Below, piece by piece: positions 10,125 through 63,530 of a DNA stretch of 64,000 bases. The position numbers and the translations under genes are program-made. Where the stretch lies: assembly GCA_964247055.1 (NCBI GenBank), contig OZ176058.1, positions 1,922,001-1,986,000 of the forward strand. The letters run 5' to 3'. The notes below the pieces were generated by a model that saw nothing but the letters and a program-made list of their open reading frames with translations, was not told where the DNA came from and made no database searches. Position 1 is the stretch's first letter. Each line of letters starts with the position of its first letter. Origin of the DNA: Paragordius varius. Lineage: Eukaryota; Animalia; Nematomorpha.

Positions 10125-12720
10125 ATGGAGAACCAATCACCAAAGATACGATGTAATGGTGAAATGTTAGTGAAACACAAAGGGAAATCAGTTTGTTTAC
10201 TCGGAAAAGTTATCGAAGTAAAATTTTTAATTACAGACAAAACGTAAAACATAAATTTATATTTTTTTTGTAATAAAATTAAAAGATAAAAATGTTAATT
10301 ACTCACACATTTAATCAAATAATTTATATTATAATTATAATCAGTTCTTGTTGGAGATATTAAGGTTCAAAACCTGTAAAAATAATTTTCAGCGTCCATA
10401 CTATAACTTATAATATTTTACTGTAATACTTAATCAATCGATTTCTTTCAAATAATTAGATTAATAGACCCAAAAATCTTTGCATAGTTAATTCAAGTGA
10501 TCAAAAAATGGTGACCGTTCTCCTGAGAAATCAAGTTCGAATTATTTTAAGAAAAAAAATTTCATGTCTATAAAGAATTGTCAGAAATTCGTATTTAAAT
10601 GATTATTTTTTTTTTAATTGTTTTGATGTTTGATATGTCAACTTTCAACATGCTCATTTTTAAGCCTTAAAATAATAATAGCTTATTAAGAATTTTTAAT
10701 TTATAATTAAAAGATATTGCAAAATATTATTCTTGATGTACAACATGCGCATATTGTAATTTTTATCTTTTGTAAAATATTAATTATAAAATTTTATTAA
10801 CTCAAAGTTTAAACACACACATAACCAAAATTAATTTAAAAGATAAAAATATTTATTGATAATTATAATATTTAAATAAATTTATAATTGTTTTCATTTT
10901 CTAGGGGTTTTCTTTGTATACATTCTAACAAAATATGTAAAGAAAAATTATAATAATTTTTTAGATTTTTTTCCCTTCTCTCTTAGCAAAGTCTTGCAAT
11001 TTTGTTATGCTGCTCTAGAGGGGTACTACACCGGGTTTTTTTTTATCATATTGATGTTTAATCTCATGAAAAAAAACATTCAATGGGATTCAGTTGTGGC
11101 GAATAAGGAGGTAAATAAACAATTTTATTCCTTAGCTCACCTACCACCGCGGCTTTGTGAATAGGTGCATTATCGCAAACTATTATTGAACTTAGTATAA
11201 ACTGAGGGAGCTATGTTTTCCTTTAATATTGGATTTCGTTCTGAATTTTTATTTTTTAATATAAACCTTCAAGTACACTAGCTGCCGAGCAAAGAAGAAA
11301 TAATGGGTTATCGTTGATATTCATAATTTTTTAAAATAACTCTAGATTTATGATTTATTTCTTTATATATATATAGAGATTAAATGGACATCTGCTTGGG
11401 TTTAGTTTATATTTTAAGTGCATGTTAAAAACCCCTAGAAAATGATAACAAATATCAAACTTGGTTATCATAAATTACATGCGCATGTTGTAAATAAAAC
11501 GTTCAAGAATAATATTTTGCAACATCTTTTAATTATAAATTAAAAATTCTTACAATAAATAGGCTATTATTATTTTAAGGCTTAAAAATGCGCATGTTGA
11601 AAGTTGACATATCAACATCAAAACAATTAAAAAAAAATTATAATCATTTAAATACGAATTTCAGACAATTCTATATAGACATGACTGTAATTATTTTAAA
11701 TAGTTAGGGAGTAAATTTTAAAAATAATATTTTTAAATATTGAAAAATTATTTTATCTAAAAGGTTTTGCATTCAATCCAAAAAATAATATATATTTATA
11801 ATTTACAAAAACTTAAAATATATTATATAAATATATAATTATCAATAATATTAAAAATAATTGAAATTTAATATATATAATATTCTTAACAAAAATATAT
11901 AAATTATTTTTACGTTCTTATATAAGGCAAAATACTTGTTCAAATTTAATTTAAAAATATATATTTAATTATATTTTTTTGAAAATTAAAAAGAAAATTG
12001 TCTTAATATTCCAATACAGATAATCAATTTATTTATGAATATATTTATAAAATATTTTTAAATATATTTTAATAAAATATTTTAATTTTTTATTTTTGTT
12101 AGATTTCAAATTACCCCATAGGTCTTACAGAATTTACAGGGACTGTAGATATGGATGGACATTTAAGATGTAATGATTTTACAATTTTCGCTTCTCAAAT
12201 GGGAAATGAATTTGGTTTAATTTAGAAATATTTTTTAATTTATTTTAAAAAATTTAAACATACCATTTACATTACAAATTTACCCTTTAACAATTCAGAA
12301 TCTTTAAGATTAAAAATTACCTATATATTTATATATTTTATAACAAAATTTTGTTTTAAATTAAAATAATACTGAAAAAATAATAAACTATGCGCCATAA
12401 AGATATATTTTACAATAATAATGACTTATATTAGTTCAAAATTACAAAATATATTTTCAAGGTCTATTTGAATTGTTTAAGTGAATTTGAACTGTAAATG
12501 GTATATTACATTTAATCATGATTAACCTTTTGAATATTGAAATTCATATTGAAATTTTAATATATTTTTTCAAATTTTATTATAATTATTTTTTAAATTA
12601 TATATTATAAACTTTTTAAAATTTTTTTTAATTATTTAAATATTAGATTTCAAAACATATGACCATGCAATTCGCTTACTTGAAAAATATCCTCAATACT
12701 ATACATTAGCTAATAATTGA
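10125..12720 (+). CDS. RPA3: Replication protein A 14 kDa subunit (OB fold), 117 aa; exons 10125-10217, 10460-10534, 12103-12214, 12647-12720
   Basis: Spliced product MENQSPKIRCNGEMLVKHKGKSVCLLGKVIE-INRPKNLCIVNSSDQKMVTVLLRNQ-ISNYPIGLTEFTGTVDMDGHLRCNDFTIFASQMGNEF-DFKTYDHAIRLLEKYPQYYTLANN*. All introns GT-AG with consistent phases (0,0,1). Matches the recalled RPA3 pattern (RINxxML...V.x.G...; FD..Y..A..I...FPQFY). Synonymous differences from the paralog confirm the frame. Confidence 0.88.
10562..11688. mobile_element. Non-autonomous DNA transposon with long (>200 bp) imperfect terminal inverted repeats, in RPA3 intron 2
   Basis: tcatgtctataaagaattgtcagaaattcgtatttaaatg... is the inverse of ...catttaaatacgaatttcagacaattctatatagacatgactg|ta. 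Right end CAGT/TA type (Tc1/mariner-like). Absent from the RPA3 paralog. Confidence 0.75.
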
Positions 12721-14893: not shown

Positions 14894-15423
14894 TAATAAA
14901 ACAATATAATTGCATAGTGTCGCAAATATTAAACCTGCACATAAACGCAAATAAACTCGCTAAACAAATTATATTCATTATGCCTGTAATGAACTATAAA
15001 GGGCTAGTATACTTGTATTAAAACTCACCTAATTTATTTCCAATATTAGTTTTCTATGAAAAAATGTTTTTGCTAAATTTCAAGATTTTTATAATATCGC
15101 AAAAAATTTGGTTAAAATTAAATTTAAGAATTCAAATATTCACAAGAAATAAAAATTAAGATAAAATAACTCAAGTTTCTCTTGGTCTTATTCCAAACTT
15201 TTATATTATGATACAAAATAATCAAATAAATGAATAAATTAAATATATAATATATTATATATATCATATTTTTATATTTTTATAAGTAAAAATTATAAAC
15301 ATTTAGAAACAATTTGCTTAAAAGGTTGACAAAATTTATATTTGAATAAATATATAGACATATATATCGACAATTCCAAAAAAAGTATATTCTATAAATA
15401 TATATACAATATATATATATATA

Positions 15424-15810
15424 CCATTTACAGTTCAAATTCACCCTTAAACAATTCAAATTCACCCTTAAACAATTCTAATTCACCCTTGAACAATTCA
15501 AATTCACCCTTGAACAATTCAAATTCACCCTAAAAATAAAATATGTGTTTTCGAACTAATATAACTCATTATTAATAAAAATATATCTTTATGGCATAAT
15601 TAATTATTTTTTCAGTATATTTTAATTTAAAACAAAATTTTATTTTTTAAAAATATATTAAAATATAGGTAATTTTTAATCTTAAAAAACATGTTAATTA
15701 TTTGAGGGTGAATTTGAATTGTTCGAGGGTGAATTTGAATTGTTCAAGGGTGAATTTGAATTGTTTAAGGGTGAATTTGAATTGTTTAAGGGTGAATTTG
15801 AACTGTAAAT

Positions 15811-15812
<2 letters not shown>
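15424..15812. mobile_element. MITE family 2 (TATA|CCATTTACAGTTCAAATTCACCC TIR with 21-bp subterminal repeats), representative copy
   Basis: Inverted arms built of ttcaaattcacccttgaacaa repeats, flanked by TA-rich sites. Other copies at about 12263-12501, 22945-23255, 25744-25996, 35018-43010 (split by the Helitron), 46600-46964, 47244-47462, 50945-51272. Confidence 0.85.
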
Positions 15813-15854
<42 letters not shown>

Positions 15855-25700: not shown

Positions 25701-26104
25701 GTTTTACCTTCCTGTATAATTTCAAATTTTATGATATAATATACCATTTGCAATACAAATTCACCCTTGAACAATTCAAATTTACCCTCGAACAATTCAA
25801 ACTCACTAAAATAAATTATGTGTGTTATAAAATTAAAATTCACCTATATTTAAATATATTTTTAAAAAATAAATTTTGTTTTAAATTAAAATAATGAAAA
25901 AATAATAAAGTATGCCATTAAGTATTTCATATTAATAATGAGTTATACTAGTTCGACAACACGTAATTGTTTAGGGTGAATTTGAACTGTAAATGGTATA
26001 TATTTAAGGTGTATCAAACCTTTTATGGTAGATAAATGGCACAAAGCTCCAACCATGGCAAACATGATTACGATTTTACTAACGCAGATATTTTGAGTTG
26101 TCAT
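21628..26104 (-). CDS. Unrecognised putative secreted or surface protein, ~145 aa; exons 26104-26020, 24673-24536, 23397-23317, 22542-22472, 21690-21628
   Basis: MTTQNICVSKIVIMFAMVGALCHLSTIKG-GCLKDGMTLSTQRYILRKGAISIITPTGTNGCLLNISMRFPLGKAT-FTSGLHNYTLTAKQDPPPATYPIVCAN-KGSANFTYNLMVANLTSDPLIIT-IADSGNTLTFLTIQQLIIAM*. Five GC-richer islands, each bounded by AG/GT, join in one frame (phases 1,1,1,0). N-terminus is signal-peptide-like. Absent from the ORF track in this frame. The last exon is uncertain. Confidence 0.7.
21932..22137. mobile_element. Short MITE, TA|CAGTCATCCATG...GGATGCATGACTG|TA
   Basis: Imperfect TIR with TA flanks; same CAGTCAT terminus as the 10562-11688 element. Confidence 0.6.
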
Positions 26105-27140: not shown

Positions 27141-29753
27141 TTAGCTGGCCAGTCACGCTTCGCTGTGACGCAGTCTTACCGATAATATCTCTTAATTATT
27201 TGCAATAAATAGAGGTTATGTAGATAAAAAAATAATTGAAAACATATTCAATAAAAAGAATGTCTTTAATTATTCTTTTAGTTTTTGCATATGCTCAAAT
27301 ATTGTTTCCTCGCAATCGACCATATTTAAACTGTCCCTTATTAAAGTTAAAATTTTAGGAAATCATGGTTAAAAGTTTTATTTTGAAATTGTGTTCACAG
27401 GATCAAGGGATATAAAAAGTAAATCATTTGTGGTCCCTTTTTAAAGGAAAGAATGATATACGAATTCCCCAGAAATGTGTTTAACTGAACTCGTATGGCT
27501 TCTAAGTTTTTGAAAATTAGCTCCAAAACCACGCCATTTTTGTATGGCGTCTCAGTTTTAAACCGGTACCCCCCTACCCATAAACCAATATGAGCGCTGA
27601 GTTAACTTCTTTGCCTTTATAGGGCAAATATTAGGAATCATCTTTGATGCCATCGTCTCATGTGTTATTGGAAAAAATACAACACTAAAAAATCGTTATA
27701 TGATGGCGTATCTTTAGGGCATAAAACCCCAAATTAACGGCTAATAAAAAATGCCTGACCTTTTTAACCTAGTTACCGGTAATATTTCAGGCTTTTAATG
27801 AGCTCAGATGGCTTCCTAATCTGTAAATTAGCTCCAAAACAACGCAATTCGTATATAGTGGCGCAGTTGGCGGGTAGCTCCTAATCCAGGGACAAGTATT
27901 AAAAGCGTTGGGTAAAATTTTTGCCTTTATATGGGGAATATCTGGAATTATCATGGATTCCATATCTTTCTATTAGACTTATAGATTTTCTGAAATTCCA
28001 AAGGCGCTCGATATGGTGACCCAGTTTTACGCGGATAGCCCCTTAACCAGGGGCGAAACAAAAAAACGCTCGATTAAAATTTTTGCCTTAATCTCGAATT
28101 ATGATTTATTCCATATGCTCTTAATAGTTTTTGAAAGAATGGCTAAAATGTCCTTTTATGGTGATGCATTTTTCAGGACAAAGGCCTAATTAAGGGGTGA
28201 TTTAATAAAACCGTTCTACTTAAAATTTTGCCTTTTAGGGGTTATATTTCCACCCCTTATTGCCTGATAAGTCATCGAAAATTTGCCTCCAAAGTCTCAC
28301 GCTGTAACGATATGGTGGCGGAGTTGTAGGGGTAGCCCCCTACCCAGAGACCAATATAAAAAAGACTTACAATAAAAAAAATTTGCCTTTTCATTCATTA
28401 TGTTCCTAATAATTTATGGAAGAATGGCTTCAAAACTAAATAATAGTTCATGATAGTGCATTTTTTAGGGCGTAAAGGGCCTAATTAACGGCTAATTTAA
28501 AAAACCGCTTGACTTAAATTTTTGCCTTTTTAGGGGTAATATTTCAGCCTCATCAAACTTATATGGCATGATAAGTTTTCTAAAAACAACGCAATTTCGA
28601 TATGGTGGCGCAGTTTTAGACGAGTTCCCTGCCCAGAGGCTGATACAAAAAGAGTTCTTGATTAATTTTTTGCCTTTTTACGGAGAATACCTGGAATCAT
28701 GATTGATTCCATGTGCTCTCCTTAGTTTTTGGAAAAATTGCCTCAAAACTATAATACCATTCTATGGTGGGGCATTTTTCAGGGCGTGAAGGGCCTAATT
28801 AACGGCTAATTAAAAAAACCGCTTGACTTAAATTTTGCCTTTTTATGGGTAATATTTTAGTCTTATCAAACTTATATGGCCTAATAAGTTTTCTGAAAAT
28901 TAAATCCTAAACAACGCAATTTCGAAATGGTGGCGCAATTATAGGCGGGTAGCTCCCTACCCAGACGCTGATACAAAAAGAGCTCTTGATTAATTTTTTG
29001 CCTTTTTACGGCAACCTGGAATCATGAATGATTCCATGTGCTCTCATTAGTTTTTGGAAAAATTGACTCAAAACTATAAAACCATTCTATGGTGGGGCAT
29101 TTTTCAGGGCGTGGAGGGCTTAATTAACGGCTAACTGAAAAAAACCGTACGACTTAAATTTTTCCCTTGTTACGGGTAATATTTTAAGTACTTATAAGAC
29201 TCATATGGCCTAAAAGGTTGTCTGAAATTGAGCCCCAAAGGCACACTATTTCGATATGATGGGGCAGTTTTTAGCGGGTATCTCTTTACCCAGCAACCAA
29301 TATAAAACAACGCACGACTAAAATTTTTGCCTTTTAACAGAGGGAATGAAATCCTCATTAAATTTGTACGGTCTCATACCTTGAGCGAAAAATAGATTCA
29401 AAAAATTATTTTTGTGGACCTGGTTTTGTTTGTAAAAAATGGCATTTTACGGAGGGAGTGGGTAGATAAAGGCCCTAAATTAAAAAAGCGAGCCGACTAT
29501 GTTCGGAGCAATGGAAAATAAAAAAAATCATATTTGAAATCGAATGGTCAAATACGTTTTCCGGAAAATTGTCTCAAAGACACGATCTTTGTGGACATGT
29601 GTTTTCAAAAAAACCCGTCTTTGACAGGGCGAAGCTATTGTCGGGGCATTCAATAATGATTACGTATTTTCGACATTTGGATTTAAATGGGTCTACTGGT
29701 TTTCTGGAAACAGATCATAAAGCCAGCATTTTCCATATTTATAAATATATATA
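27141..29753 (-). mobile_element. Older non-autonomous Helitron related to the 7.76-kb element, with degenerate internal ~155-bp tandem repeats
   Basis: About 430 bp at 29310-29750 are homologous to the A unit and its terminus (...aaagccagcattttccat.tttataaatatata). The other end reads gtcac-agcgaagc-gtgac hairpin + tggccagCTAA on the minus strand. The motif 'ttttgcctt' recurs every ~140-165 bp from 27.9 to 29.3 kb. Confidence 0.7.
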
Positions 29754-45374: not shown

Positions 45375-48300
45375 TTTTCAGGTTTTAGAATGTGCTAGAA
45401 AAATTTAAAATATGATTTGTTAAAATAGCATATTAAAAACAATATAAAAATATAAAATGACAATATTACTAGTTTGGAATTCACAAAAGGAAAAATACAA
45501 ATAAAAAGTTTGAATTCAAAAAAATATAAATTAATTATGAAAATATATAAAAAAAATTTTTATCAGTGAAAAAAATAATTAACTTGCAAAATAGGGTAAA
45601 ACACTTAAAAAATTGTTTTTTTATTGAAAATACAGGTGGAAACAAATCAATAAAATATATTTATTTTCAATGTCATGATTAGTAATATATATATATATAT
45701 ATATTATCCATATAATTTGTTAATAAGATTAATTATTAATAAATTTTTTACGCCCATATTTTATTTTTGAAAAAATATTTTATTACTGTAGCATATGTTA
45801 TAATAAAAAAGTTTGACACAATTATAATCGAATTTATTTTAATACATAGGAAGTAAAATGTTTAATTTAAACCGCGTGTTGTTTGTTCCCATACGCGACT
45901 GTAAATAAGATTTATATTTTTTTATATAATAGTGTTTTCCACATATCTCCTGTATAAAAATATTATGTTAAAAATTATTTTTTACTGAAATTAAAATATT
46001 TATAAATTATATATATAAAGCTTCTAGAACTCGATACAAACACCTGATGTTTAACGAAAAAATGTGCCAATTTCGATTTTATACATTTACAGTAATTTAA
46101 TTTTTTTCATCTTAATAAATATATTTTAGTGATTAAATGAATATATTAGGACATATTTAAGCGACAAAAAATTAAAATTTTACAATTTTAAAAATATAAC
46201 TTTTCTAGCTAGGTTACAGAATATATATTGATAATTTAAATTTATATTATAAATATTATTTTAGAAATCGACCAGGGGTAAAAAATTATTTTAAAGTTTT
46301 TTTTTATAAACAATTTCCGACAAAATTACAGTAAAAACTGAAATTATACGGACAAAAAGGTAAAAATATAAAGACATAGATTTATTTCTAAAAGACAACC
46401 ATACTTTTTAAATCTTAATTTTTTTAATATAACTCATGTTTTAAATGGCAAAGTGTGAAATAGAGAGAGATATATATATATATATGACTAACCCAATCAA
46501 TTCTATATTTTGGGAAACATTAAGGTTTAAAAAGTATGGTTGTCTTTTTGAACCAAAAAATATCTGTCTTTATATTTTTACGTTTTGTCCATTATAATAC
46601 CATTTACAGTTCAAATTCACCCTTGAACAATTCAAATTCAGAACAATTCAAATTCACCCTCGAACAATTCGATTCACTCTAAAAATAAATTATGAAATTT
46701 CGGTCTAATATAACTCATCAATATAGATAAATATATTTTTATGGCAAAGTTTATTATTTTTTCAGTATTGTTTTGATTACATACAAAGTTTCTTTTTTAC
46801 AAAATATAAAAAAATATAAATATTTTTTAATCTTAAAAAACACATAATTTATTTTAGGGTGAATTTGAATTGTTCGAAGGTGAATTTGAATTGTTCAAGG
46901 TTTGAATTTGAATTGTTCAAGGGTGAACTTGAATTGTTTAAGGGTGAATTTGAGCTGTAAATGGTATATATGGGCATTCAAGAATATTTTATTAGATTTC
47001 CTTTATAAAACTGTAAAATGCAAAAACAAATACCACAATTTTTTATGTTTTGTTGTTAATTTTTACTAATATATTAAATTTGGATTTTCTAAATTTTTAG
47101 CGGGCCGCATATGTTGAACACCCTCGGTCTAAAATGTACCTTTATCAAAAACTTTAATCCAAATTTGTCCTTTAAAAATTTAATTTAAGGTTTCTTAAGA
47201 TTTGTATTACGTTTTTTTAACTGTTCTTGGATTTTGGTATATACCATTTACAATTCTAATCACCCTCGAAACAATTCAAATTCACCCTAAAAATAATTAA
47301 TTTGTTTTAGGGCATCTAATATAACTCATCATTTATATGTAATAGTTTATGGCATAGTTTATTCAGTATTATATCAATTTTAAACATTATAAAAAAATAT
47401 AGGTAATATTTAATGTTAAAAAACACAAAATTTATTTTAGAGTGAATTTGAACTTTAAATGGTATAAAAAATATAATCTAAAATCCATTGATTTATATTC
47501 TATTATAACACATTGATAAAAATAATTAGAAGAGCTATGTTTAAAGAGTATTAAAAATCTAATTTATATAATTTCTATTTTTGAAGTTTATTTTTTGCCA
47601 CTAAATTTTAAAGCTTACATCCTTCTATGAGCAATCAATTATAATTAAAAGCCTAAAAAAATGCATCATTAATACAAAATTTTAAAAATATCGATTATCT
47701 TTTTATTTATTAACGAGATATTTAGAAAAAGCATCAGTTTTTAATCTTAACTTTAATATTTTGTTTTGCTATATTTATTATATAATTTTTAAACGGTATA
47801 TTAAATTAATTGTCGGTTTCAAAAACAATATAAAAGTTATATGGATTTTTTGCAGAATACATATGTTTTTTTTTAAAAAAAGTTACTTAAATTACCAAAT
47901 AATTGTTCGAAAACTTAATTTTATATGACATAAAATTATTTAAATAATGTTTTTTTAAATAATGTTTTTTTAAATAATTTTTTATAAATGTAGAGATATT
48001 TTAGCACCTGTCTCTAATTTAAAAATTAATATTTATCAAAAAAAAGGTTTAATCAATAAATTAATAAGTATAAAATTTTAAGCGAAAATATATAATTATA
48101 AAATAATTTAAATACAATTATATATAAAAAATAAATTACCTGTGGTGTGGTATTGATGGTTACATATTAGAGAAATCAAAATAAATTTAAATGATTTTCA
48201 TGATTTCGAAAAATATATTTTTTTAAACATAAAGAATCCAGATAATGAAAGAATCTTTAAAAAGCGAACAAAATAAAAAATACTAAATTAATTAGAAAAA

Positions 48301-51300
48301 ATTTATATATATATTGCAAATTTAACGTTAAACAGATATTAATATATATATATATATATATATTAGTTAATATATAAGATATACGAAAAATCAAATAAAA
48401 AAGTATAAAAAACAAAAAATATAGAGCATAAAACAGGTGATTGTGTTTTCTTAGGTAAATTTTTTTTTGTATAAAAACTAATTTTTTGACATGAATGTGA
48501 ATAGTACAGTAGCGTATGATATTAAAGAACAAATAGTTGAAAATAAATGTAAATGTTAATAATGTGACAAAGAAAATGTTCAATTTCTACCCTTGTTTTG
48601 TTTGTTACTATACACAACTGTATTTTATAAAAATAAAAAATGATAAAAAGAGAAAGTCATTTATGTAAAGACGTCTTCAAAATAAAAAAATATTTTTCAC
48701 GTAAAAATAATAATTATTTTGACATATATTCAATTAGTAGTAATAATAATTGACAAAAATTTTACAAATATGTTATTTATATTTGATATTTTTTTATAAA
48801 ATTTTTATTTTTTATATTTGTGATAATTCATATTACATTCAATATTTTCTTTTGATTAAGTTAATTAAATTAACCACAAAACTTGCTTTGATAAATAAAA
48901 TATTCTTTTATAAAGATTCAAATAAGATTAATACAAATAATTGTTAAATGATTTTACACATATTTTAAGTTATTATGTCAATTTTTGAAATTTTTTTTAA
49001 AATTATAAACTATATACCTATAATTCCTCTAAAAGGAGTTGAATACTTCAGCCATAAAAATGAGAATTAACTATTCTTTTTTCGAAAAATATATATTTCC
49101 ATTTTAAATGTAGGTTTAATATGTTTCTAATATTTTTGGAGATTAAAAAGGTTGGTAGGTAGGTAGGTAATTCGTTAGGTGGAGTTTGATTCCTTAGAAT
49201 TCCTTCCTTACAGTATTCTGCCATCTTAACATCAGTCTTTCTTTATTTTTTCCAAAAATGAAATTATTCTAAGAAATGTACTTATTAAAATGTAACACTA
49301 AAGTGACCAGATAGGCTGTTTTTCGCAGTACAGTACTGGATTTTTAGAAAAAAACTGCGACTGTACTGCGCTCACTTTTGTACTGCTTTTTGAAATTAAA
49401 AATAATTACTTATGAATATATATTAATTACCTTTTTTAAAAAAAATTATTTTATAATTTAGTACCCTCTGTAAAAATAAACCCATAATTTGTAAACATAT
49501 TGGTCATTTTGTAATAAAAAACTAAGATTGGCCTATTTTGAATTGGTTAATATTTTGTTTTTTGCTCGAATTATACATAAAATTGGATTTTGAATCGGTC
49601 AAACCTTATCATTGTAGCCTTTCGCACATTGGCAAAAATATAAATCTCGGGCTCCACCGTAAGATTCAGGCTAATGGCTCTTTCACTCAGGACTTCCGCA
49701 AATAAAGGTGTCTCAAAATTTAAAATTAACAAAATTAATTTATGATATTTTAATAAATGTTTGATCATGGTTAGAATCATTTTTTGTTAAAATTATTAAA
49801 CGGAAATAGAAAATTGTTATCTCCGTAACTTATATTAAAAATTTATTATTATGGCATATGATTTTGAAATAACCTTTTTTTTCTTAAAAATTAAGAGAGT
49901 TACGTTTTCTATTCTTATTAGGTGTCAGGTATGATACTTAACTTTTTTCCTAAACTTTATGTTTATTAGTTTTCTGATTTTTAACAAATTTGAGATATTT
50001 TGTTGAATACTTCTAACAGTTCTGAATGATGGACATGGTTCGCTTTAAGATATAATAAAACCCTTTTTCTAAATAATTCGATGTTGAACATAGGGTTTTA
50101 ATTTAAAGGTAATTTTGGTGAATTTTTGTAAAAAAACACCATTTTTATTTAACCTAAATTTGAAAACGAACGAATATTTTAATTAACATTTTGAGAAATT
50201 AGCATTATCGAATTATAAAAAAATGTTAGAACAACCGTTTATATCGTTTCCATCATGCTGAAATTAGAATGTAGTATGCTTCAACAAAGTTTGCTAAAAA
50301 TCAAATTTTTGGAGGTATGCATTTTTTAAAAAATATATTTAGTTGATATCAAAATTTAGCATATATAAAACTATTGCATATCTCGGAATTTTTGCGATTA
50401 TTTTAAGAGAACAGTAGTTTTAAGAGAGCCAAAAATTTGGGACTTTCAGAGCCCACATATAAAAACTTCCAAAAGTACCATGATAATCCCGATATTTTCC
50501 TAACAGAGTATATATATTTCATCTGGAAGGTTTTTGTGGAAACTGTCTTATATACCACACCTATGGTGTAGACACAGCCAAAGTATGTTTTAATTTTGTA
50601 CTGCGCTTAAGTTTAAAATATCTAGTCACATTATGTAACACCAATGTAGGTGAACTTTCTTTTTATTATATAGCTTCCATAAATTTTTTTACGATACGAT
50701 TTGAATATGGGTTTTAAACTATCTGAGCAAACTTTCGTAAAATATAGACATAATCAATATTTTAATTTTTTGTGCAAAATATTTTAATTTATAATTAATT
50801 GTTTTTCACAGAACAAGTAATTCGATCATTAAATATATATTTTTAACATTTTAAAGTATGAAACTAAGTATACTATGCTAGAAAGTTAATAATTATTCTT
50901 AAATAGCATATGCAGCAAAGAGATTTTATTTTGGGGCTAATATACCATTTACAGTTTAAATTCACCCTTAAACAATTCAAATTCACCCTTGAACAATTCA
51001 AATTCACACTCGAACAATTCAAATTTACCCTAAAATAAATTATGTGTTTTTTAAGATTATATATTAGCTATATTTTTTATATTTATAAAAAAAAGAAATT
51101 TTGTGTGTAATCAAAATAATACTGAAAAAATAATAAACTTTGCCATAAAAATATATTTAATTTTAATGATGAGTAATATTATACGGAAGTTTCATAATTT
51201 ATTTTTAGGGTGAATTTGAATTGTTCAAGGGTGAATTCGAATTGTTTAAGGGTGAATTTGAACTGTAAATGGTATATATACTTACTGTAAGTACAATATA

Positions 51301-53250: not shown

Positions 53251-55414
53251 TTAAATCGAGGTTTTAGCCATACTCATGGTTGTTTCATGTACAGAGAAGG
53301 AAATAGAAGTCACAGTAGTGGTTAATGTTTGAGAATTTGGATTGGAAACATTTATAGCTTCTATTATTGTAGTCGCCGTTGGTGGTTGCAAAAAAGTTTG
53401 ATTTTGCTGTGAAGGAAAAAATTTCCCAACCAAATCTCGGATAATTAAATCAACACGCGCTGTATGAGCAAGGCTCATTTCAGCCATCGCCATACTATCT
53501 ATCCAAGTTTCATCTTTTCCAAATAAAGAGTTATTTGGCGTATAAGTTATAGGTTTTTGGGAACCTGAAGAAAAATTTCGCTTCTCCATATCATTTTCCA
53601 TTTTTGGCCCCGTTCTTTCTGAGGCAGAATTTTGGTGAGGTTCTTCTTGGTTAGTCGTTAGGTAGTAGTTTTCATCATTTAACCACAACAAAGAATTATA
53701 TTTATTAGCATTATCCACATTAACATTATCATCCTTACACGATTCATCCAAACTGCGTTTGGTATCAAATTCATCCAAATTTTCTTGAGTAAAACCATCC
53801 GTTTCTGTTTTACATAATATTGATTGTTTGTTTTCGTTTTCAAAAGTTTCATTTCCACCAATTTCTAGTTGTGATGATAAACCACTTTTAGAAACGTTCT
53901 TATTACTGCGTGTTGATACGTGATGTAAAAATTGACCAAACGCACTTTGGCAATGGTAGAGCGAGGATAGCAGACGAGTATGTAAAACGGTCGATAAATC
54001 AGGACTTTGATACACCACACCTGCTATAATGTAATAATCTGTTAGGGGTGTAGTCCCCATAACATAAGATGGGCCGGCGCCGTGATCAGCTGATTTAATC
54101 AGTTGATTTTGCGCATTAGGATTAGCGGTATTAATTCGATGTCTATGTTGTTTTCGTATAACATATAGGATTGGTTCCTGGCTATGTATGAGGACATACT
54201 CTATCCCCGTCATATTTTTGAGGTGTGTAGCCGGGTCAAGACCTAAAAAAATAATAGAAAATTGGATAATATATACAGTAACGAAAGTTTTTATAAGACA
54301 TATCTGTATTTCAAAAGGGCTAAAAAGGTCTGTTACCGGGTGTATGAAATTTTTCTTTTTATTTATCACTTAATTAATTAAACACTGTATTTTTCAAATA
54401 TGTAAAACTAATAAAAATGAAAAAAATCGTAACTGGATATGTAAAAAAATATCCTTTATCCATTAAAATCTCAGATAGGGTCTAAATAGTTTTCCTTACC
54501 GTATTATATATAAATAATATAGTTATGCATATTTATGCTGGCCTATTTACATTATTCGGTCACACAGTAGGGTGTGTTATGAAGCAAATGTTGTCCATAA
54601 TTAAATGAACCAATTAATGCGCTAAGATAGGAATAAATTGGTTAATTTTAACATTTCTTTGTTTTTACCCATACTGTCGCGTGTTGCCCTATTGACCAAC
54701 TATAATATGAATAGGCCGGCATTAAAATGCATACTCTATATGTATATATATATATATATATATATCAACATTAGGCAAATCACAGCAAGAATTTAAATTA
54801 AATAGAGAAGAAAGGAAAATTGATGGCTAAAAAAATAGTGAAAAAATCCCTTTTTTCCAGACATTAACATTGAGCCAATAAATAGGATGTATAATAAAAA
54901 ACATTATTTTTATTGCTTATTTGTATTTTTACTGTAAAAATTTCCTCCTAACTGATACTCGCTATCTAGCAAAGTTAAAAACACACTTTCATTTGAAGAG
55001 TACAATTAAAAATTCTTAAAATTTTAAAATTATGCTTGACATTAAAAAACATTTGTCTTTTAGGTTTTTACATTTTATATGTATAATTTTCATTTTTACC
55101 GAAATATAAATGAGGATTAGCGATATATTTTATACGTTTTGTCCGTATAAATTCAAATTTTACTGAACTAAAAAACTTTATAAAACTATAAAAAAGGCTT
55201 CTTAAATTTTGAATCTTTATAATAAAATAAATTTAAAACCTTGCATTTTCACGCTTTCGTTGTTACAGGTGCGATCATAAAATGGATTACTTTTTTCACA
55301 AAAGTAATCTAGCACATTGTTTGCATTTAGAATTGGAATCCAAGCACTATCATGCCAAGAAATACTAAGGGGATTTGAAAGCTCTGAAGCAATATTTTCT
55401 GAAACTAAGGACAT
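53251..55414 (-). CDS. MED6: Mediator of RNA polymerase II transcription subunit 6, 388 aa; exons 55414-55240 and 54242-53251
   Basis: [41 protein letters not shown]|[32 protein letters not shown]...[18 protein letters not shown]...QSAF and C-terminal [11 protein letters not shown] are the recalled Med6 motifs. One phase-1 GT-AG intron. Confidence 0.95.
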
Positions 55415-56235: not shown

Positions 56236-57282
56236 ATGTTAGCAAACCCAATTATTGCTTCAAATGCGATTGAAAGGCATGGACATAGATGGAATCCCTA
56301 CCTAAATCATGGAGGGTAAGATTTTCAGACTTATGATAAAATATAATTACAAATTTTAAAACTTAGTACCTAAATTATTAAAAACTTAATATATTCTTTG
56401 GGTTACTTAAGAATTTTTTTAGTATTTATTTGCCAAATTTATAATCATTAATTTTATATGACTTTAGTTGATTCCTATTTAAAATTTATTTTCTAGAAGC
56501 GTGGTCGCAATAGCTGGTGAAGATTTCGCCATAATCGGTTCTGATACACGCTTGAGTGAGGACGAAAGTGGGGAAATTTTGACCCGAAATCAATCTAAAA
56601 TTTATAAATTGTAAGAATTTTTATAAATTTAATTTAAAATATTTTATTTTTTCTTAAAAATAAAATTATTGAATTTATTAAATATATGTATATAAAAAAA
56701 TATTTCAATTAATATAAAAATTGTTACACGCTTGAGTGAGGACGAAAGTGGGGAAATTTTGACCCGAAATCAATCTAAAATTTACAAATTGTAAGAATTT
56801 GTTTTAATAAATTTAATTAAAAATATTTTATTTTTTAAAAAAAATAAAATTATTTATAAATCTTTAAAATATACATTTATATATTTATATATAAATATAA
56901 AAAAATATATTTTTTCAATCAATATAAAATTGTGACATGGCTGAGTGAGGACATAAGGAAATTTAATTGATCTAACTTTTGGGAATCGTAAGATTTTTTA
57001 TAAATTCTATAAAAATAATTTTAAAATATTTTTTAGATTAACAAGAAATTTATAAGGAATTAATATTTAAGACAGATTTAATATTTTAAATTATTGAATA
57101 TTATAATTTTTGTTTTTACGTAATTTTGTTATCATATTAAATTATTCTATCTAAAAATATTTTTAAAAACAACAATTTATAAATTGTAGGATATTTTTTA
57201 ATAATCAAATAAAAAGTATTTTTAATTTAATTTAAAATTGGTGAATACCAAAGAGGGAAAATTTTAACTTAATCCAAATATA

Positions 57283-57323
<41 letters not shown>

Positions 57324-58761
57324 GTCAAAAAACTTATTTAATTTTATTATAATCAAATAAAACAATTATTAGGCTTAAAAACATTTTTTAACGCAAAAAA
57401 ATTATCTATTTTTTACTTTATTATATATGGGTTAAAATTCATAGTTTTTTTTACAAAAAACATTATAATATTTTTTAATAATAAATTACTAGAAATATAT
57501 AAATATTAAAAATAATTAAATTTCTTTTTATGATTTTTAATAAAAATGCGCACCCTTTTTTAATTTTAGAACGGCTGGTTCAATGTTGGGTCTTTGTGGT
57601 TTCCATGGCGACGTAATTCAATTATTAGGTCAATTGGAATATGCTATTAAAGTACATTTTAAATTTATAATTTTTACATAAAAATATTTTTTATAATGTA
57701 TATAATTTTGTTTATTTATTTTTGCAAAAAAAATTATTTTTTTTAAAAAATTTATTTTAATATAATATTTGAAAAAATTGGAATTATAGGAAAAAATAAA
57801 TAAATTCAATAAATTTAATGTAATTGAAAGTTTAATTTTAAAATTAATTTATTTTAAAATCTTAATTTAAAATTTTTAGTTATAAAAAACTTTGTAAAAC
57901 TAATTTTATGAAGAAATATTTGCAAAAACGAAATTTTTCGTAAAAATATTATTTTTATTTAAAAAAAATATTCTTTAAAACATATTTTTTATTAATAATT
58001 TCTGATATAAATATAAATATTTTATCAAAAAAAATATAAATTTCCAAAAAAATAAATTAATTTAATAAAAAATTTATTTTTTTTAGGTTTACAAACGCGA
58101 AAATTATAGTACAATATCAACCAGTGCACTTGCTAATATGTTATCTCGTTAAAAAATAAATATTTGAAAAAATTAAAAAAAATAAAATTAATTTTAAATT
58201 ATAAAAGATTTACATATATATATATATATGTATATATTTATTTATTTATTTAATAAAAATATTGAAATTTTTAATGAATTTAAGGAAAATCCAAAAAAGT
58301 TTTTCATTTAAAAATATAAATAAAAATTCAATTTAATAAAATATTGTTTATATATATATAGAAATAAAATTTTTAAATTTTTTTATATAAAATAAATATA
58401 AACTGATAAAATTTTTAAAAAAATAATATTAATTTTAGGTTTACAAACGCAAGAATTACATTTCAATATCAACCAGTGCTCTTGCTAATATTTTATCATA
58501 TTAAAAAATGAAAAAATTAATAAAAAGATTAAACTAATAAATAAATATGATAAAATATTTCAAAAATTAGTTTAAAAAATATAAAACATTAATATATTTA
58601 TATATATATATATATATATATTTAATAAAAATATTAAAAATATAATTAAAATTTTAAAAAAATCTAAAAAGAACGAAAAACAAATGTTAATTCATCTAAC
58701 AAAAAAATTTTTATTTATAAAATATATATAAAAATTCAATTAAATTTAATTAAATAATATC

Positions 58762-58807
<46 letters not shown>

Positions 58808-59470
58808 TATAATAAAATTTTTTAAATATATTAATTAATAAATTAATAAAAAATTTATTTTTAATAAAAATAATTAATTTTAGGTTTACAAACGCGAAAA
58901 TTATAGTACAATATCAACCAGTGCACTTGCTAATATGTTATCATTTAAAATATATAAAATTAATTAAAAAAATAAAGATTAAAATTATAACCCTAATATA
59001 TATACATATATATATATATATATATGATAAAATTTTTTAAATATAATTAAGAATTTAAAACGAGAAAAAAAGTTTTTTATTAAAAAAATTAATAATATAA
59101 TTAAATTTAATTGAATAATTTATATATATATATAAATATATTAATAATATAATTAAGATTATAAAAATATTAATAATATAATTAAATTTAATTAATAATT
59201 TTAGGTTTACGAACGCGATAATTACAGTACAATATCAACTAGTTCAATTGCTAATTTGTTATCTTGTTAAAAAATATATATTTGAAAAAATAAAAAAAAA
59301 TAAAATTAATTTTAAATAATAAAAGATTCACATATATATAATATATATGTATATATTTATTTATTTATTTAATAATAATTTTGAAATTTTGAATTTATTA
59401 AGAGAAAAAAAGAATGAAAAATAAATATGTTAATATATTATCTAACATAAAAGTTTTTAATTTAACAAAA

Positions 59471-59519
<49 letters not shown>

Positions 59520-60223
59520 TTTTTTTAACAATTCTATTTAATTAATAATTTATTATATATTTAAATACTAATTAAAAAATTTATGTTCAATAAAAAATAT
59601 TATTTTTAGGTTTACAAACGCGAAAATTACAGTACAATATCAACCAATGCACTTGCTAATATGTTATCTCGTTAAAAAATAAATATTTGAAAAAATTAAA
59701 AAAAATAAATTAATTTAAAAAAAAGATTAAAATTTTAACTTTAATATATATATAATTAATAAAAATATTTTGAATATAATTGAATTTGAAAAAATTTAAA
59801 AAGTATAAATAATATGATTAAGAATTTAAAATAGAAATAAAATTCAATTTAATTAAATATTGTTTATATATATATATATATAATTAATATTTATAAATAA
59901 AAATTTATACATAAATATAAAATTTTTAAATTTTCAATAACAAAATATTATTTTTAGGTTTACAAACGCGAAAATTATAGTACAATATCAACCAGTGCTC
60001 TTGCTAATATGTTATCATGTTAAAAAAATTGAAAAATTTTAAACTAATTAATAAATATTTTATAATATTCTAATATTAGTTTGAATAATTTATATATAGA
60101 TTTAATGGAATTATTAATAAATGAAGATTTTAAAAATATTAATAATAAAGTGAAGAATTTAAAATATCTAAAAAAGTTTTAAATTTAAAAATATATAAAA
60201 AAATTCAATTTAATTAAATAATA

Positions 60224-60294
<71 letters not shown>

Positions 60295-60501
60295 TATACA
60301 TATATATAATTAAATTTCTTTATATAAAATTAATAAAAATTAATATATTTTAATAAAAAATTATTTTTTAGGTTTACAAACGCGAAAATTATAGTACAAT
60401 ATCAACCAGCGCTCTTGCTAATATGTTATCTTGTACGCTTTATAATAGACGATTTTTTCCACTTTATGTCTACAATCTGCTCATTGGACTAGATGAAAAT
60501 G
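56236..60501 (+). CDS. PSMB1: Proteasome subunit beta type-1 (beta6), 5' part; exons 56236-56315, 56497-56610, 57570-57651, 60372-60501; remaining exons not found in window
   Basis: [27 protein letters not shown]|[38 protein letters not shown]|[27 protein letters not shown]|[44 protein letters not shown] matches PSMB1 (PY..NGG, AIAGEDF, DTRLS, GFHGD, LY.RRFFP.YVYN). Phases 2,2,0,1. Confidence 0.95.
56726..57295 (+). repeat. Partial copies of the PSMB1 exon-2 3' half plus donor, in intron 2
   Basis: acacgcttgagtgaggacgaaagtggggaaattttgacccgaaatcaatctaaaattta.aaatt|gtaagaattt is near-identical at 56726-56800; decayed copies at ~56935-57000 and ~57240-57295. Confidence 0.85.
58060..60030 (+). 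repeat. Six tandem partial copies of the PSMB1 exon-4 acceptor plus first ~60 nt, in intron 3
   Basis: ttttag|gtttac...aatatcaac...gctaat..tta.tc at 58087, 58439, 58884, 59205, 59610, 59958, separated by AT-rich spacers of ~260-380 bp. Confidence 0.95.
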
Positions 60502-63500
60502 GTATTATATAAAATTTATTCAGATCACCTGATTTTATTAAAAAAATAAAATATAGAGCAAAAATTTGAAAATTATTTGAGTTTACCTAAAAATTTGGGG
60601 AAATTGGTATTTCTTTGATAATTTATTAATTATCTATTTAAATAAGCTAATATTATAAAAAAAATAAAAAGTTTAAAAATTATATGTGTTAAGTTAAAAA
60701 TTTGGGGAAAAATGGTATAATTTTATCATTAATATATATATTTATTCAGATCAGTTGATATTTTGTTAAATTAAGCTCAAAAATTTAAAAATTTTTGAGT
60801 TTACCTAAAAATTGGGGAGAAAAAATGGTATTTTTTACTATATATTTATTCAGATCAGCTGATGTTATAAAAAAATTTAAATATAGAACAAAAATTTGAA
60901 AATTATTTAAGTTTACTAAAAAATTTTGGGGAAAAATGGTATAATTTTATCATTAATATATATATTTATTCAGATCACCTGATTTTATAGAAAAAATTTA
61001 AAATTCTAGGACAAGTTTATAAATTATCTCCAAAAATTTGAGGGAAAATGGTATTTTTGGTATTTTTTTAATTATCTATTTAAATAAGCTGATATTATAA
61101 AAAAAATAAAAAATTTTCAAATTATTTGAGTTTACCTAAAAAATTGGTAAAAAATGGTATTTTTTCCATAATTTTTGAACGATTTTTAGGTTATGATCAG
61201 CTGATTTTTGAAAAACGTTAAAAAATTAAATTAAGCTCAAAAATTTGAAAATTATTTAAGTTTACCTAAAAAAATGGGGGGGGGAAATGGTATAATTTTA
61301 TCTTTTATATATATTTATTCAGATCACCTGATTTTATAGAAAAAATTAAAATATAGAACAAAAATTTGAAAATTATTTGAGTTTACCTAAAAATTGGGGG
61401 AAAAAATGGTATTTTTTTGATAATTTTTGAACATTTTTTAAGTACAGATCACAGTTGATTGTATAAAAAAATATAAAATATAGAACAAAAATTTGAACAT
61501 TTTTTAAGTTTATTCTAAAAATTTGTGGAAAAAATGGTATATTTTTATAATTATTAATTATTTATTCAAATCACCTGATTTTATTGAAAAAATTTAAAAT
61601 TCTAGGACAAGTTTATAAATTATTTCTAAAAATTTGGGGGGAAATGGTATTATCTCTTATATTTTGATTTTAAGTACAGATCACCTGATTTTATGGAAAA
61701 AATAAAATATAGAACAAAAATTTGAAAATTATTTGAGTTTACTTAAAAAATTGGTGAAAAAATGGTATTTTTTTACTATATATTTATTCAGATCAGCTGA
61801 TTTTATGGAAAAAATTTAAATTTCTAGGACAAGTTTATAAATTATCTTCAAAAATTTGGGGGAAAATGGTATTTTTTCGATAATTTTTGAACAATTTTTA
61901 AGTACAAATCACCTGATTTTGTAAAAAAATAAAAAATTAAAATATAGAACAAAAATTTGAAAATTATTCATGTTTACCTAAAAATTTGCGGGTAAAATGG
62001 TATTTTTTTGATAATTTATCTATTCAGATCACCTGATTTTGTAAAAAAATAAAAAATTATTTTAAGGCTCAAAAAGTTGAAAATTATTTGAGTTTACCTA
62101 AAAAAATGGGGGTAAATGGTAATTTTTATCATAATTTATTAATTATCTATTTAAAACAGCTGATTTTTTGTTAAATTAATCTCAAAAATTTGAAAATTAT
62201 TTAAGTTTACTTAAAAAAATTGGTGAAAAAATGGTTTTTTTACGATAATTTTTGAACAATTTTTAAGTACAGATCAGCTGATTTTATAGAAAGGGCTTAA
62301 AACTTATATGTGTTAAGTTAAAAATTTGAAAATTATTTAAGTTTACTTAAAAAAATTGGTGAAAAAATGGTTTTTTTACGATAATTTTTGAACAATTTTT
62401 AAGTACAGATCAGCTGATTTTATAGAAAGGGCTTAAAACTTATATGTGTTAAGTTAAAAATTTGAAAATTATTTAAGTTAACTTAAAAATTTGGGGGTAA
62501 ATGGTATTTTTACGATAATTTATTTTATCTATTCAGATCAGCTGAGTTTATAGAAAAAATTCAAATTTCAAAATTATTTAAATTTACCTATAAAATTTGG
62601 GGAAAAATAATATTTTTCCCATATATTTTGAACAATTTTTGGGTTAAATGAAAATATAGAACAAAAATTTGAAAAATATTTGAATTTACCTAAAATGGGG
62701 GGGGGGGGGGGGGGGGGGGGGGGAAATGGTATTTTCAATAATTTTATTATTTATCTATTCAGATCATCTGATTTTATAAAACAAATTTAAATATAGAACA
62801 AAAATTGGAAATTATTTATGTTTACCTAAAATATTGAGGGAAAAAATGGTATTTTTTCGATAATTTTTGAACAATTTTTGAGATCAGTTGATTTATATTA
62901 AAAAAAGAAAAATTTAAAATTCAAGATTGTTTATTAAAGTTTTAGAATTATTTAAGTTTACTAAAAAATTTCGGGGAAAAATGGTATTTTTTTCATATAT
63001 TTTGAACAATTTATAACTACAGATCAGCTGATTTAGGGAAAACGTTAAAAAATTAAATTAAGCTCAAAAATTTGAAAATTATTTAAGTTTACCTAAAAAA
63101 TTGAAGGAAAATGCTATTTTTTTGATAAATTTTGAACAATTTTTGAGATCAGCTGATTTTTTGTTGAATTAAGCTCAAAAATTTAAAAATTAGTTGAGTT
63201 GACCTAAAAATTTGTGAAAAAATGGTATTTTTTCGATAATTTTTGAACAATTTTTAAGTCCAGATCACAGTTGATTTTGTGAAAAAATAAAAAATTAAAA
63301 TATAGAACAAAAATTTGAAAATTATTTGAGTTTACCCAAAAAATGGGGGGAAAAATGGTATAATTTTATCATTTATATATTTATTCAGATCAGCTGATTT
63401 TATTTAAAAAATTAAAATATAGCTCAAAAATTTGAAAATTATTTGAGTTTACCTAAAAATTGGGGAGAAAAATTGGTATTTTTTCCATATATTTTAAACA

Positions 63501-63530
63501 ATTTTTAAGTTAATATTAGCTGATTTTGAT
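60495..63530 (+). repeat. ~110-135 bp degenerate tandem repeat (about 25 units) in PSMB1 intron 4
   Basis: Unit: g(n)aaaaatggtat...tttattcagatca(c/g)ctgatttt...aaaaatttgaaaattattt(g/a)agtttacctaaaaa. Unit count estimated by eye. Confidence 0.9.

What the first reader, a model, noticed from the sequence alone, without database searches (positions are those of the whole stretch)
57652..60371. PSMB1 intron 3 is a ladder of six duplicated AG|GT acceptors: possible recursive-splicing system born from exon-junction duplication
Seen: the real exon 4 (60372) is preceded by six copies of its own acceptor plus ~60 nt (58087, 58439, 58884, 59205, 59610, 59958). Five run into TAA at codon 22 (e.g. [21 protein letters not shown]); the third stops a few codons later. 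Each acceptor is followed immediately by GTTTAC. In copies 1, 4, 5 and 6 the similarity ends at a second GT (c/t|GTTAAA), defining 61-nt frame-shifting cassettes. Known: recursive (ratchet) sites are AG|GT and are often followed by stop-containing RS-exons with a competing downstream donor. GTTT-type donors are used by real introns in this window (RPA3 intron 3, MED6, the secreted-protein gene). Inference: splicing exon 3 to any decoy regenerates AAA|GTTTAC, so the intron could be removed stepwise and an essential gene could tolerate six poison acceptors. The cassettes could also feed nonsense-mediated decay as dosage control. The exon-derived blocks look better conserved than the spacers, and copy 4 has several synonymous or conservative changes.
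Basis: partly seen in the sequence, partly recalled or inferred. Interest (0 to 1): 0.88.

Follow-up and report, generated by a model that had tools for sequence, protein, structure and literature searches.

The report
Tandem decoy splice acceptors in PSMB1
A ~400-base piece spanning the intron 3/exon 4 boundary of a proteasome gene has been copied head-to-tail seven times, leaving six intact-looking decoy splice acceptors in front of the real one; this is real and a good natural test of splice-site choice, but nothing yet shows that the copies drive stepwise (recursive) splicing.

Summary
Six copies of the exon-4 acceptor plus 61 nt of exon lie upstream of the real exon 4 of a PSMB1-type gene, at the stated coordinates. 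All six keep TTTTAG|GTTTAC.

They belong to a diverged tandem array with units of 321-445 bp. One breakpoint lies in exon 4 at +62/63 and the other in the intron at about 57743.

The blocks are better conserved than the spacers. The spacers are about 5% GC and scrambled by indels, and a duplicated exon-2 end in intron 2 shows the same contrast. So this contrast is no evidence of function.

The same gene has two more arrays that span splice junctions:
- two copies of the exon-2 end plus donor, in intron 2;
- 19 copies of the exon-4 donor, in intron 4.

Neither has AG|GT, so recursion cannot explain why they are tolerated.

Best reading (0.6): a near-neutral minisatellite spanning the junction. 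The true acceptor-donor pair is chosen by exon definition, and any use of a decoy yields stop-containing RNA.

Recursive splicing is possible (about 0.15). A GTTTTA donor is really used in MED6. However, the regenerated AAA|GTTTAC donor is weak and the intron is short.

No close relatives were found.

First-reader notes of this scan list many similar arrays elsewhere in this genome.

The parts
57570..57651 (+). PSMB1 exon 3. Its donor is AAA|GTACAT at 57652.
   Evidence: tblastn with PSMB1 homologues; sequence.
57652..57742 (+). Unique head of intron 3, upstream of the array.
   Evidence: Only unit 1 has this stretch in the alignment of units.
57743..60434 (+). Tandem array of seven diverged units. 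Block-to-block spacing is 352, 445, 321, 405, 348 and 414 bp. Each unit is an AT-rich spacer plus an acceptor plus 61-63 nt of exon 4. The last unit runs on into the rest of exon 4.
   Evidence: the repeat finder family D2; MAFFT alignment of units.
58087..58147 (+). Decoy block 1. It has a T8 tract before AG|GTTTAC, 95% identity to the live exon, TAA at codon 22 and GTTAAA at +62.
58439..58499 (+). Decoy block 2. It is old (87% identity to the live exon), has a T4 tract, and has lost the block-end GT.
58884..58944 (+). Decoy block 3. It is identical to block 1 over 58 nt. The block-end GT is lost and the stop falls at codon 29.
59205..59265 (+). Decoy block 4. It is the most diverged (85% identity) and has GTTAAA at +62.
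59610..59670 (+). Decoy block 5. It has 92% identity to the live exon and GTTAAA at +62.
59958..60018 (+). Decoy block 6. It is the closest to the live exon (97% identity) and has CAT|GTTAAA at +62.
60372..60501 (+). Live exon 4 (130 nt, 34% GC). Its acceptor is T6-AG and its donor is ATG|GTATTA.
   Evidence: tblastn at 57% identity to PSMB1 residues 101-144.
56546..56989 (+). Companion array in intron 2. The last 65 nt of exon 2 plus the GTAAGA donor (56546-56612) are copied at 56726-56792, differing in the exon-derived part only at tataaatt/tacaaatt. A decayed third copy lies at about 56935-56989. There is no AG|GT.
   Evidence: Sequence; alignment; tblastn hit at 56726-56791.
60503..63530 (+). 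Companion array in intron 4, with period about 111/222 bp. The unit repeats the exon-4 end and donor (AAAATG|GTAT) and the first part of intron 4. There are 19 further ATG|GTA sites in the window. There is no AG|GT.
   Evidence: TRF; list of sites in register.

Best explanation
Intron 3 was inflated from about 440 nt to 2.7 kb by a minisatellite. A segment of about 400 bp ran from the intron (about 57743) to 62-63 nt inside exon 4. It was duplicated in tandem and the array then grew to seven units by unequal exchange or slippage. This is shown.

Only the last copy is joined to the rest of exon 4, so only it can give a working mRNA.

The six upstream copies are by-products, not a device. This is inferred. 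The AT-poor exon-derived blocks stay recognisable because they lack slippage-prone runs, while the 5%-GC spacers are churned by indels.

The spliceosome finds the right site by exon definition. This is also inferred. The live exon is the only place where an acceptor copy is followed within 130 nt by the gene's real donor and by the unduplicated core of the exon. This happens in a gene with 80-131 nt exons at 34-41% GC, set in introns of 10-20% GC.

Occasional use of a decoy would give a stop-containing RNA that is discarded.
For: - Whole units, spacers included, are homologous and lie head-to-tail.
- Every unit carries unique sequence, so this is not an artefact made of identical repeats.
- 52-76% of the sampled 31-mers of the stretch are held by four runs from two samples.
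- Blocks have essentially no indels, while flanks carry 6-10 gap columns per 60 nt.
- Blocks 1 and 3 are identical over 58 nt. Their upstream flanks differ mainly by a local 18-20-nt duplication.
- The young exon-2 copy in intron 2 shows the same contrast: a single difference in the exon-derived part against many indels in the intronic part made by the same duplication.
- The old blocks 2 and 4 decay like neutral DNA, at 13-20% divergence and mostly with replacement changes.
- Introns 2 and 4 of the same gene carry arrays of donor copies without AG|GT. A general tolerance mechanism is therefore needed.
- The GC contrast between exons and introns is strong.
- First-reader notes list many similar arrays in this genome. 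These notes are unchecked.
Against: - There is no RNA evidence at all.
- The decoy blocks are themselves exon-like GC islands (31-33% GC in 5% GC). They have good T-tracts, and block 1 has the best one (T8). Four have a downstream GT no weaker than the real donors by U1 matching. Exon definition alone therefore does not obviously exclude them.
- AG|GTTTAC is intact even in the two oldest copies. On their divergence elsewhere, the rough chance of that is about 0.06, which is a mild hint of constraint.
- Variants shared between copies are mostly synonymous: 4 of 5, against 2 of 14 for private variants (my count; Fisher p about 0.017, post hoc). This points to repeated exchange with the live exon rather than simple decay.
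Confidence: 0.6

Rival explanations
1. Recursive ('self-healing') splicing. Exon 3 is joined to a decoy acceptor. The junction AAA|GTTTAC then acts as a donor and is spliced to a later copy, until the live exon is reached. Use of a decoy would then cost nothing.
For: - AG|GTTTAC is invariant in all six copies.
- Four copies have a 61-nt out-of-frame unit ending in GT. This resembles cryptic RS-exons of about 50 nt (PMC8605326).
- A GTTTTA donor is really used in MED6 intron 1.
- Real donors of this gene are also weak, at 4-6 of 9 U1 matches.
Against: - The regenerated donor has only 3 of 9 U1 matches and A at -1. It is weaker than the block-end GTTAAA (4-5 of 9), whereas ratchet-point donors are normally the stronger of the two.
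- The intron is 2.7 kb, not tens of kb.
- The live exon regenerates the same AAA|GTTTAC, so an efficient recursion donor would also skip exon 4.
- GTTTAC is simply the Val-Tyr start of the exon.
- The donor-copy arrays in introns 2 and 4 are tolerated without any AG|GT.
Confidence: 0.15
2. Regulatory poison cassettes or decoy exons. The 61-nt blocks are recognised as exons. Either they are included, shifting the frame so that NMD follows, or they engage the intron's ends unproductively and cause retention of intron 3. Either way they would tune proteasome subunit dosage.
For: - AG...GT units of 61 nt with stops are present.
- Decoy exons in introns longer than 1 kb that promote intron retention are described in human erythroblasts (PMC6097662 and PMC7373989, listed).
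- The blocks have exon-like GC.
Against: - No expression data exist.
- Copies 2 and 3 have lost the downstream GT.
- Copies differ in age and decay, which fits drift rather than a maintained device.
- Similar arrays are noted in many unrelated genes of this genome, which argues for a mutational habit rather than gene-specific regulation.
Confidence: 0.1
3. Assembly artefact. The array, or its copy number, is an error of assembly in very AT-rich repetitive DNA.
For: - GC is about 10% and several (TA)n runs are present.
- Only 52-76% of the sampled words are held by the four DNA-like runs, against 64-94% for exons 1-2.
- Those runs may be the assembly's own data.
Against: - Units differ from each other by many substitutions and indels, and each has unique spacer sequence. 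Artefacts give near-identical copies.
- The blocks carry distinct private changes.
Confidence: 0.04

Closest known systems
Recursive splicing at ratchet points with cryptic RS-exons (Drosophila Ubx, kuz, Bx; vertebrate long genes), as summarised in PMC8605326.
   Same: The acceptor and GT are juxtaposed. A short out-of-frame unit of about 60 nt with its own downstream GT follows. Inclusion would be harmful.
   Different: Here the GT-side motif is weak (GTTTAC) and is set by the coding sequence. It is not stronger than the downstream GT. The intron is 2.7 kb. There are six sites, 320-445 nt apart, made by recent duplication. No intermediates have been observed.
Intragenic tandem duplication spanning a proto-splice site or splice junction (the tandem-duplication model of intron gain or sliding; PMC2891723, PMC4974935).
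   Same: A local tandem duplication copies splice signals together with coding sequence. Only one copy stays in use and the rest becomes intron.
   Different: No new intron is created. An existing intron is lengthened about six-fold. The duplication has been repeated up to seven units. The same exon is also flanked downstream by an array of its own donor.
Decoy exons that promote intron retention (PMC6097662, PMC7373989), and poison exons coupled to NMD.
   Same: These are stop-containing cryptic exons with usable splice sites inside an intron longer than 1 kb.
   Different: Known cases are single, conserved and shown by RNA data. Here there are six copies of differing age and no RNA data.

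Membership tests
Recursive splice site (ratchet point / RS-exon) | A 3' splice site and a 5' splice site are juxtaposed (AG|GT). | tested here: met
   TTTTAG|GTTTAC is present in all six copies.
Recursive splice site (ratchet point / RS-exon) | The regenerated donor is strong, and stronger than the donor of the cryptic RS-exon (PMC8605326). | tested here: not met
   AAA|GTTTAC has 3 of 9 U1 matches, against 4-5 of 9 for the block-end GTTAAA. Caveat: donors are weak throughout this genome, and AAG|GTTTTA is used in MED6. No species-specific model could be built.
Recursive splice site (ratchet point / RS-exon) | A short cryptic exon lies downstream with its own donor. | tested here: met
   A 61-nt unit ends in GT in copies 1, 4, 5 and 6. 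The GT is lost in copies 2 and 3.
Recursive splice site (ratchet point / RS-exon) | The site lies in a very long intron. | tested here: not met
   Intron 3 is 2720 nt, with steps of 321-445 nt.
Recursive splice site (ratchet point / RS-exon) | Splicing intermediates, saw-tooth coverage or lariats are seen at the site. | not testable with these tools
No listed run is shown to be RNA holding the locus.
Recursive splice site (ratchet point / RS-exon) | The AG|GT core is conserved between species while the exon body drifts. | not testable with these tools
   No close relatives were found. The best MED6 hit has 57% identity, the best exon-4 hit 64%, and the metagenome scan gave 0 hits.
Junction-spanning tandem duplication (intronic minisatellite) | Copies lie head-to-tail and their spacers are homologous too. 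| tested here: met
   The repeat finder families D2, D4, D8 and D17; alignment of units.
Junction-spanning tandem duplication (intronic minisatellite) | The terminal copy is continuous with the unduplicated rest of the exon, and the breakpoints can be defined. | tested here: met
   Similarity to the live exon ends at +62/63 in every copy. What follows matches the intron at about 57743.
Poison exon / decoy exon | A cryptic exon with a stop or frameshift is bounded by usable splice sites. | tested here: inconclusive
   The sequence features are present, but whether the sites are usable is unknown.
Poison exon / decoy exon | Inclusion or intron retention is seen in RNA and is sensitive to NMD. 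| not testable with these tools

The most novel reading that the evidence does not exclude
Duplications of an exon junction create working ratchet points from scratch. Whenever exon 3 is joined to a decoy, the AAA|GTTTAC junction is re-spliced to a later copy. The ladder is therefore self-healing. This property would let arrays of decoy acceptors build up in essential genes of this genome at exons that start with GT. It would show a birth mechanism for recursive splice sites.
Probability: 0.12. Interest if true: 0.8.

Novelty: new member of a known kind. Interest (0 to 1): 0.45.

Why it matters
One essential housekeeping exon sits between six near-perfect copies of its own acceptor and about nineteen copies of its own donor. 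The genome's splice signals are weak: real donors match the U1 consensus at only 4-6 of 9 positions.

That makes a ready-made natural experiment on how the spliceosome picks the right pair. The candidates are exon definition, first-come-first-served choice, and recursion.

The array is also a trap for gene annotation.

If such arrays are as common in this genome as the scan's unchecked notes suggest, two further things become possible. They would allow a genome-wide test of whether decoy acceptors are tolerated only where AG|GT is regenerated. They would also document a strong local tandem-duplication process that shapes intron size.

Tried and rejected
- RNA evidence. There is therefore no junction, lariat or coverage data. 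After that, no search tool received letters of 59270-59322. The Rfam scans were split around those places, and the scripts skipped or masked them. Some local scripts did read the whole window file: TRF, and the column table, which touches 59270-59284.
- Sequencing runs. X1-X4 hold intron as well as exon, so they look like DNA. X5's 0.05 share is probably (TA)n words.
- Relatives. The MED6 ORF next door gave at best 57% identity over a quarter of the query. The exon-4 peptide gave at best 64% identity among 1.84 billion representatives. An exact-pattern scan of metagenome contigs gave 0 hits. No cross-species comparison of the array was possible.
- Spliced protein query. A query joining exons 1-4 has no reference, so I left it out rather than type it.
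- Rfam.
- Masking structure. No reverse-complement match to the block longer than trivial AT 9-10-mers was found from 55000 to the window's end.
- TRF does not report the intron-3 array, because the spacers are too diverged.
- Coding constraint on the decoys is rejected. Overall 6 of 19 inferred changes are synonymous, and copies 2 and 4 carry mostly replacement changes.
- Literature. I found no paper describing arrays of duplicated exon junctions of this kind.

Full report
**Observation**

The sequence between 57652 and 60371 holds six copies of the exon-4 acceptor and the first 61 nt of exon 4 of a PSMB1-type proteasome gene. They start at 58087, 58439, 58884, 59205, 59610 and 59958. The live exon starts at 60372.

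Each copy reads TTTTAG|GTTTAC. Five copies hit TAA at codon 22 and copy 3 stops at codon 29. Copies 1, 4, 5 and 6 end in C/T|GTTAAA at +62.

PSMB1 homologues recovered with the exon-4 peptide align by tblastn to exons 2, 3 and 4, and partially to all six decoys. That fixes the exons at:
- e1: 56236-56315
- e2: 56497-56610
- e3: 57570-57651
- e4: 60372-60501

The blocks align to each other without gaps at a mean 91% identity. The alignment score is 49.6, against 6.8 +/- 2.1 for shuffled sequence. Chance is excluded.

**Anatomy**

The copies are not isolated insertions. The whole 321-445 bp unit repeats head-to-tail, and the spacers share recognisable sub-blocks (families D2, D4, D8 and D17; alignment).

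In every copy, similarity to the live exon stops at +62/63. What follows matches the intron at about 57743. So the founding event was a tandem duplication of about 400 bp, running from the intron into exon 4.

Before that, intron 3 was about 440 nt. Now it is 2720 nt at 9.8% GC.

The pattern of relatedness between units is a mosaic:
- Blocks 1 and 3 are identical over 58 nt.
- Block 6 is the closest to the live exon (97%).
- Blocks 2 and 4 are old (87% and 85%).
- The closest partner of a unit changes from segment to segment.

This is what unequal exchange produces.

Because every unit has its own sequence, an assembly artefact is unlikely. Four runs from two samples hold 52-76% of the sampled words, though they may be the assembly's own data.

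**Are the blocks conserved for a reason?**

The blocks are far better preserved than their flanks. The 60-nt flanks score only 26, against 21 +/- 3 for shuffles. The difference, however, lies mostly in indels. The flanks are about 5% GC, full of A-runs, T-runs and (TA)n, and carry 6-10 gap columns per 60 nt. The blocks carry essentially none.

Blocks 1 and 3 illustrate this. Their blocks are identical, and their upstream flanks differ mainly by a local 18-20-nt duplication.

A control exists in the same gene. The last 65 nt of exon 2 plus its GTAAGA donor are copied at 56726-56792. The exon-derived part differs from the live exon only at tataaatt/tacaaatt. The intronic part made by the same duplication already has many indels. 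That copy has no acceptor. So the contrast is a property of the DNA, not of a splicing function.

Within the blocks I infer 19 changes, of which 6 are synonymous. Copies 2 and 4 carry mostly replacement changes. There is no coding constraint, and copy 4 is not special.

Two weak hints remain:
- The AG|GTTTAC core is untouched even in copies 2 and 4. Given their divergence elsewhere, the rough chance of that is about 0.06.
- Variants shared by several copies are mostly synonymous: 4 of 5, against 2 of 14 for private variants. My hand-calculated Fisher p is about 0.017, and the test is post hoc.

The second hint is better explained by repeated copying from, or exchange with, the selected live exon than by function in the decoys.

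**Context in the same gene**

Exon 4 is flanked on both sides by copies of its own splice sites. Intron 4 is an array with period about 111/222 bp. Its unit repeats AAAATG|GTAT and the first part of the intron. There are 19 further ATG|GTA sites in register within the window. With the exon-2 copies, three of the four visible introns carry arrays that span a junction.

Neither donor array has AG before the GT. Recursion therefore cannot be what makes them harmless.

First-reader notes of this scan list many similar acceptor or donor arrays in other genes of this genome, including CYC1, ZDHHC, DPM1, sestrin, PPIH, eIF5A, RUVBL1 and RPB1. I did not check them.

**Mechanism**

The reading that covers all three arrays has two parts. 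The first is a genome with a high rate of local tandem duplication in AT-rich introns. The second is a spliceosome that defines exons across the exon.

Exons here are 80-131 nt at 34-41% GC, in introns of 10-20% GC. The live exon 4 is the only place where an acceptor copy, the unduplicated exon core and the first donor copy lie within 130 nt.

This reading is inferred, not shown, and it has a weak point. The decoy blocks are themselves exon-like GC islands with good T-tracts (T8 in copy 1). Four of them have a downstream GT that is no worse than the real donors by U1 matching.

**Recursive splicing**

The idea is coherent. Joining exon 3 to any decoy gives AAA|GTTTAC. Homology also forces a real AAG|GTTTTA donor in MED6 intron 1, so GTTT-type donors do work in this organism.

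Measured against the defining features summarised in PMC8605326, several points do not fit:
- The regenerated donor is the weaker of the two competing donors: 3 of 9 matches, against 4-5 of 9.
- The intron is short.
- The live exon regenerates the same motif, so an efficient recursion donor should also skip exon 4.

I put recursion at about 0.15, regulated poison or decoy exons (PMC6097662, PMC7373989) at about 0.10, and an artefact at about 0.04.

**What could not be done**

There is no RNA evidence.
- No close relative exists in the protein collections or metagenome contigs.
- Rfam finds nothing.
- No antisense partner of the block exists nearby.

**Verdict**

This is a real and striking structure. 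Its origin by duplication of an exon junction is established. A splicing function is neither shown nor excluded, and a neutral by-product is the most economical reading.

Noticed in passing
window 60503-63530: Intron 4 of PSMB1 is a tandem array with period about 111/222 bp. Its unit repeats the exon-4 end and donor (AAAATG|GTAT) plus the first part of the intron. There are 19 extra donor copies in the window. Exon 4 is therefore flanked by arrays of both of its own splice sites.
   Followed up: partly
window 56546-56989: The last 65 nt of exon 2 plus its GTAAGA donor are copied in intron 2 at 56726-56792, with a single difference in the exon-derived part. A decayed third copy that still keeps GTAAGA lies at about 56935-56989.
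   Followed up: partly
window 12260-12504, 15421-15815, 25741-25999, 46597-46967, 47241-47465, 50942-51275: Six copies of a 225-395 bp MITE-like element. Its inverted ends finish in ...GAACTGTAAATGGTAT, and it has subterminal repeats of about 22 bp (GGGTGAATTTGAATTGTTTAA).
   Followed up: partly
window 55241 (minus strand), MED6 intron 1: Homology to MED6 proteins forces a donor AAG|GTTTTA. Donors with T at +3 are really used in this genome. The MED6 second exon continues into a long Asn-rich C-terminal extension (ORF 53251-54369).
   Followed up: yes
window 28413-29228: A tandem repeat of period 325 bp, 2.5 copies and 85% matches, at about 34% GC. It could be a duplicated exon or another array that spans a junction.
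   Followed up: no
window 62690-62725: A run of more than 30 G inside one unit of the intron-4 array. It is an expanded version of the GGGG found in every unit.
   Followed up: no
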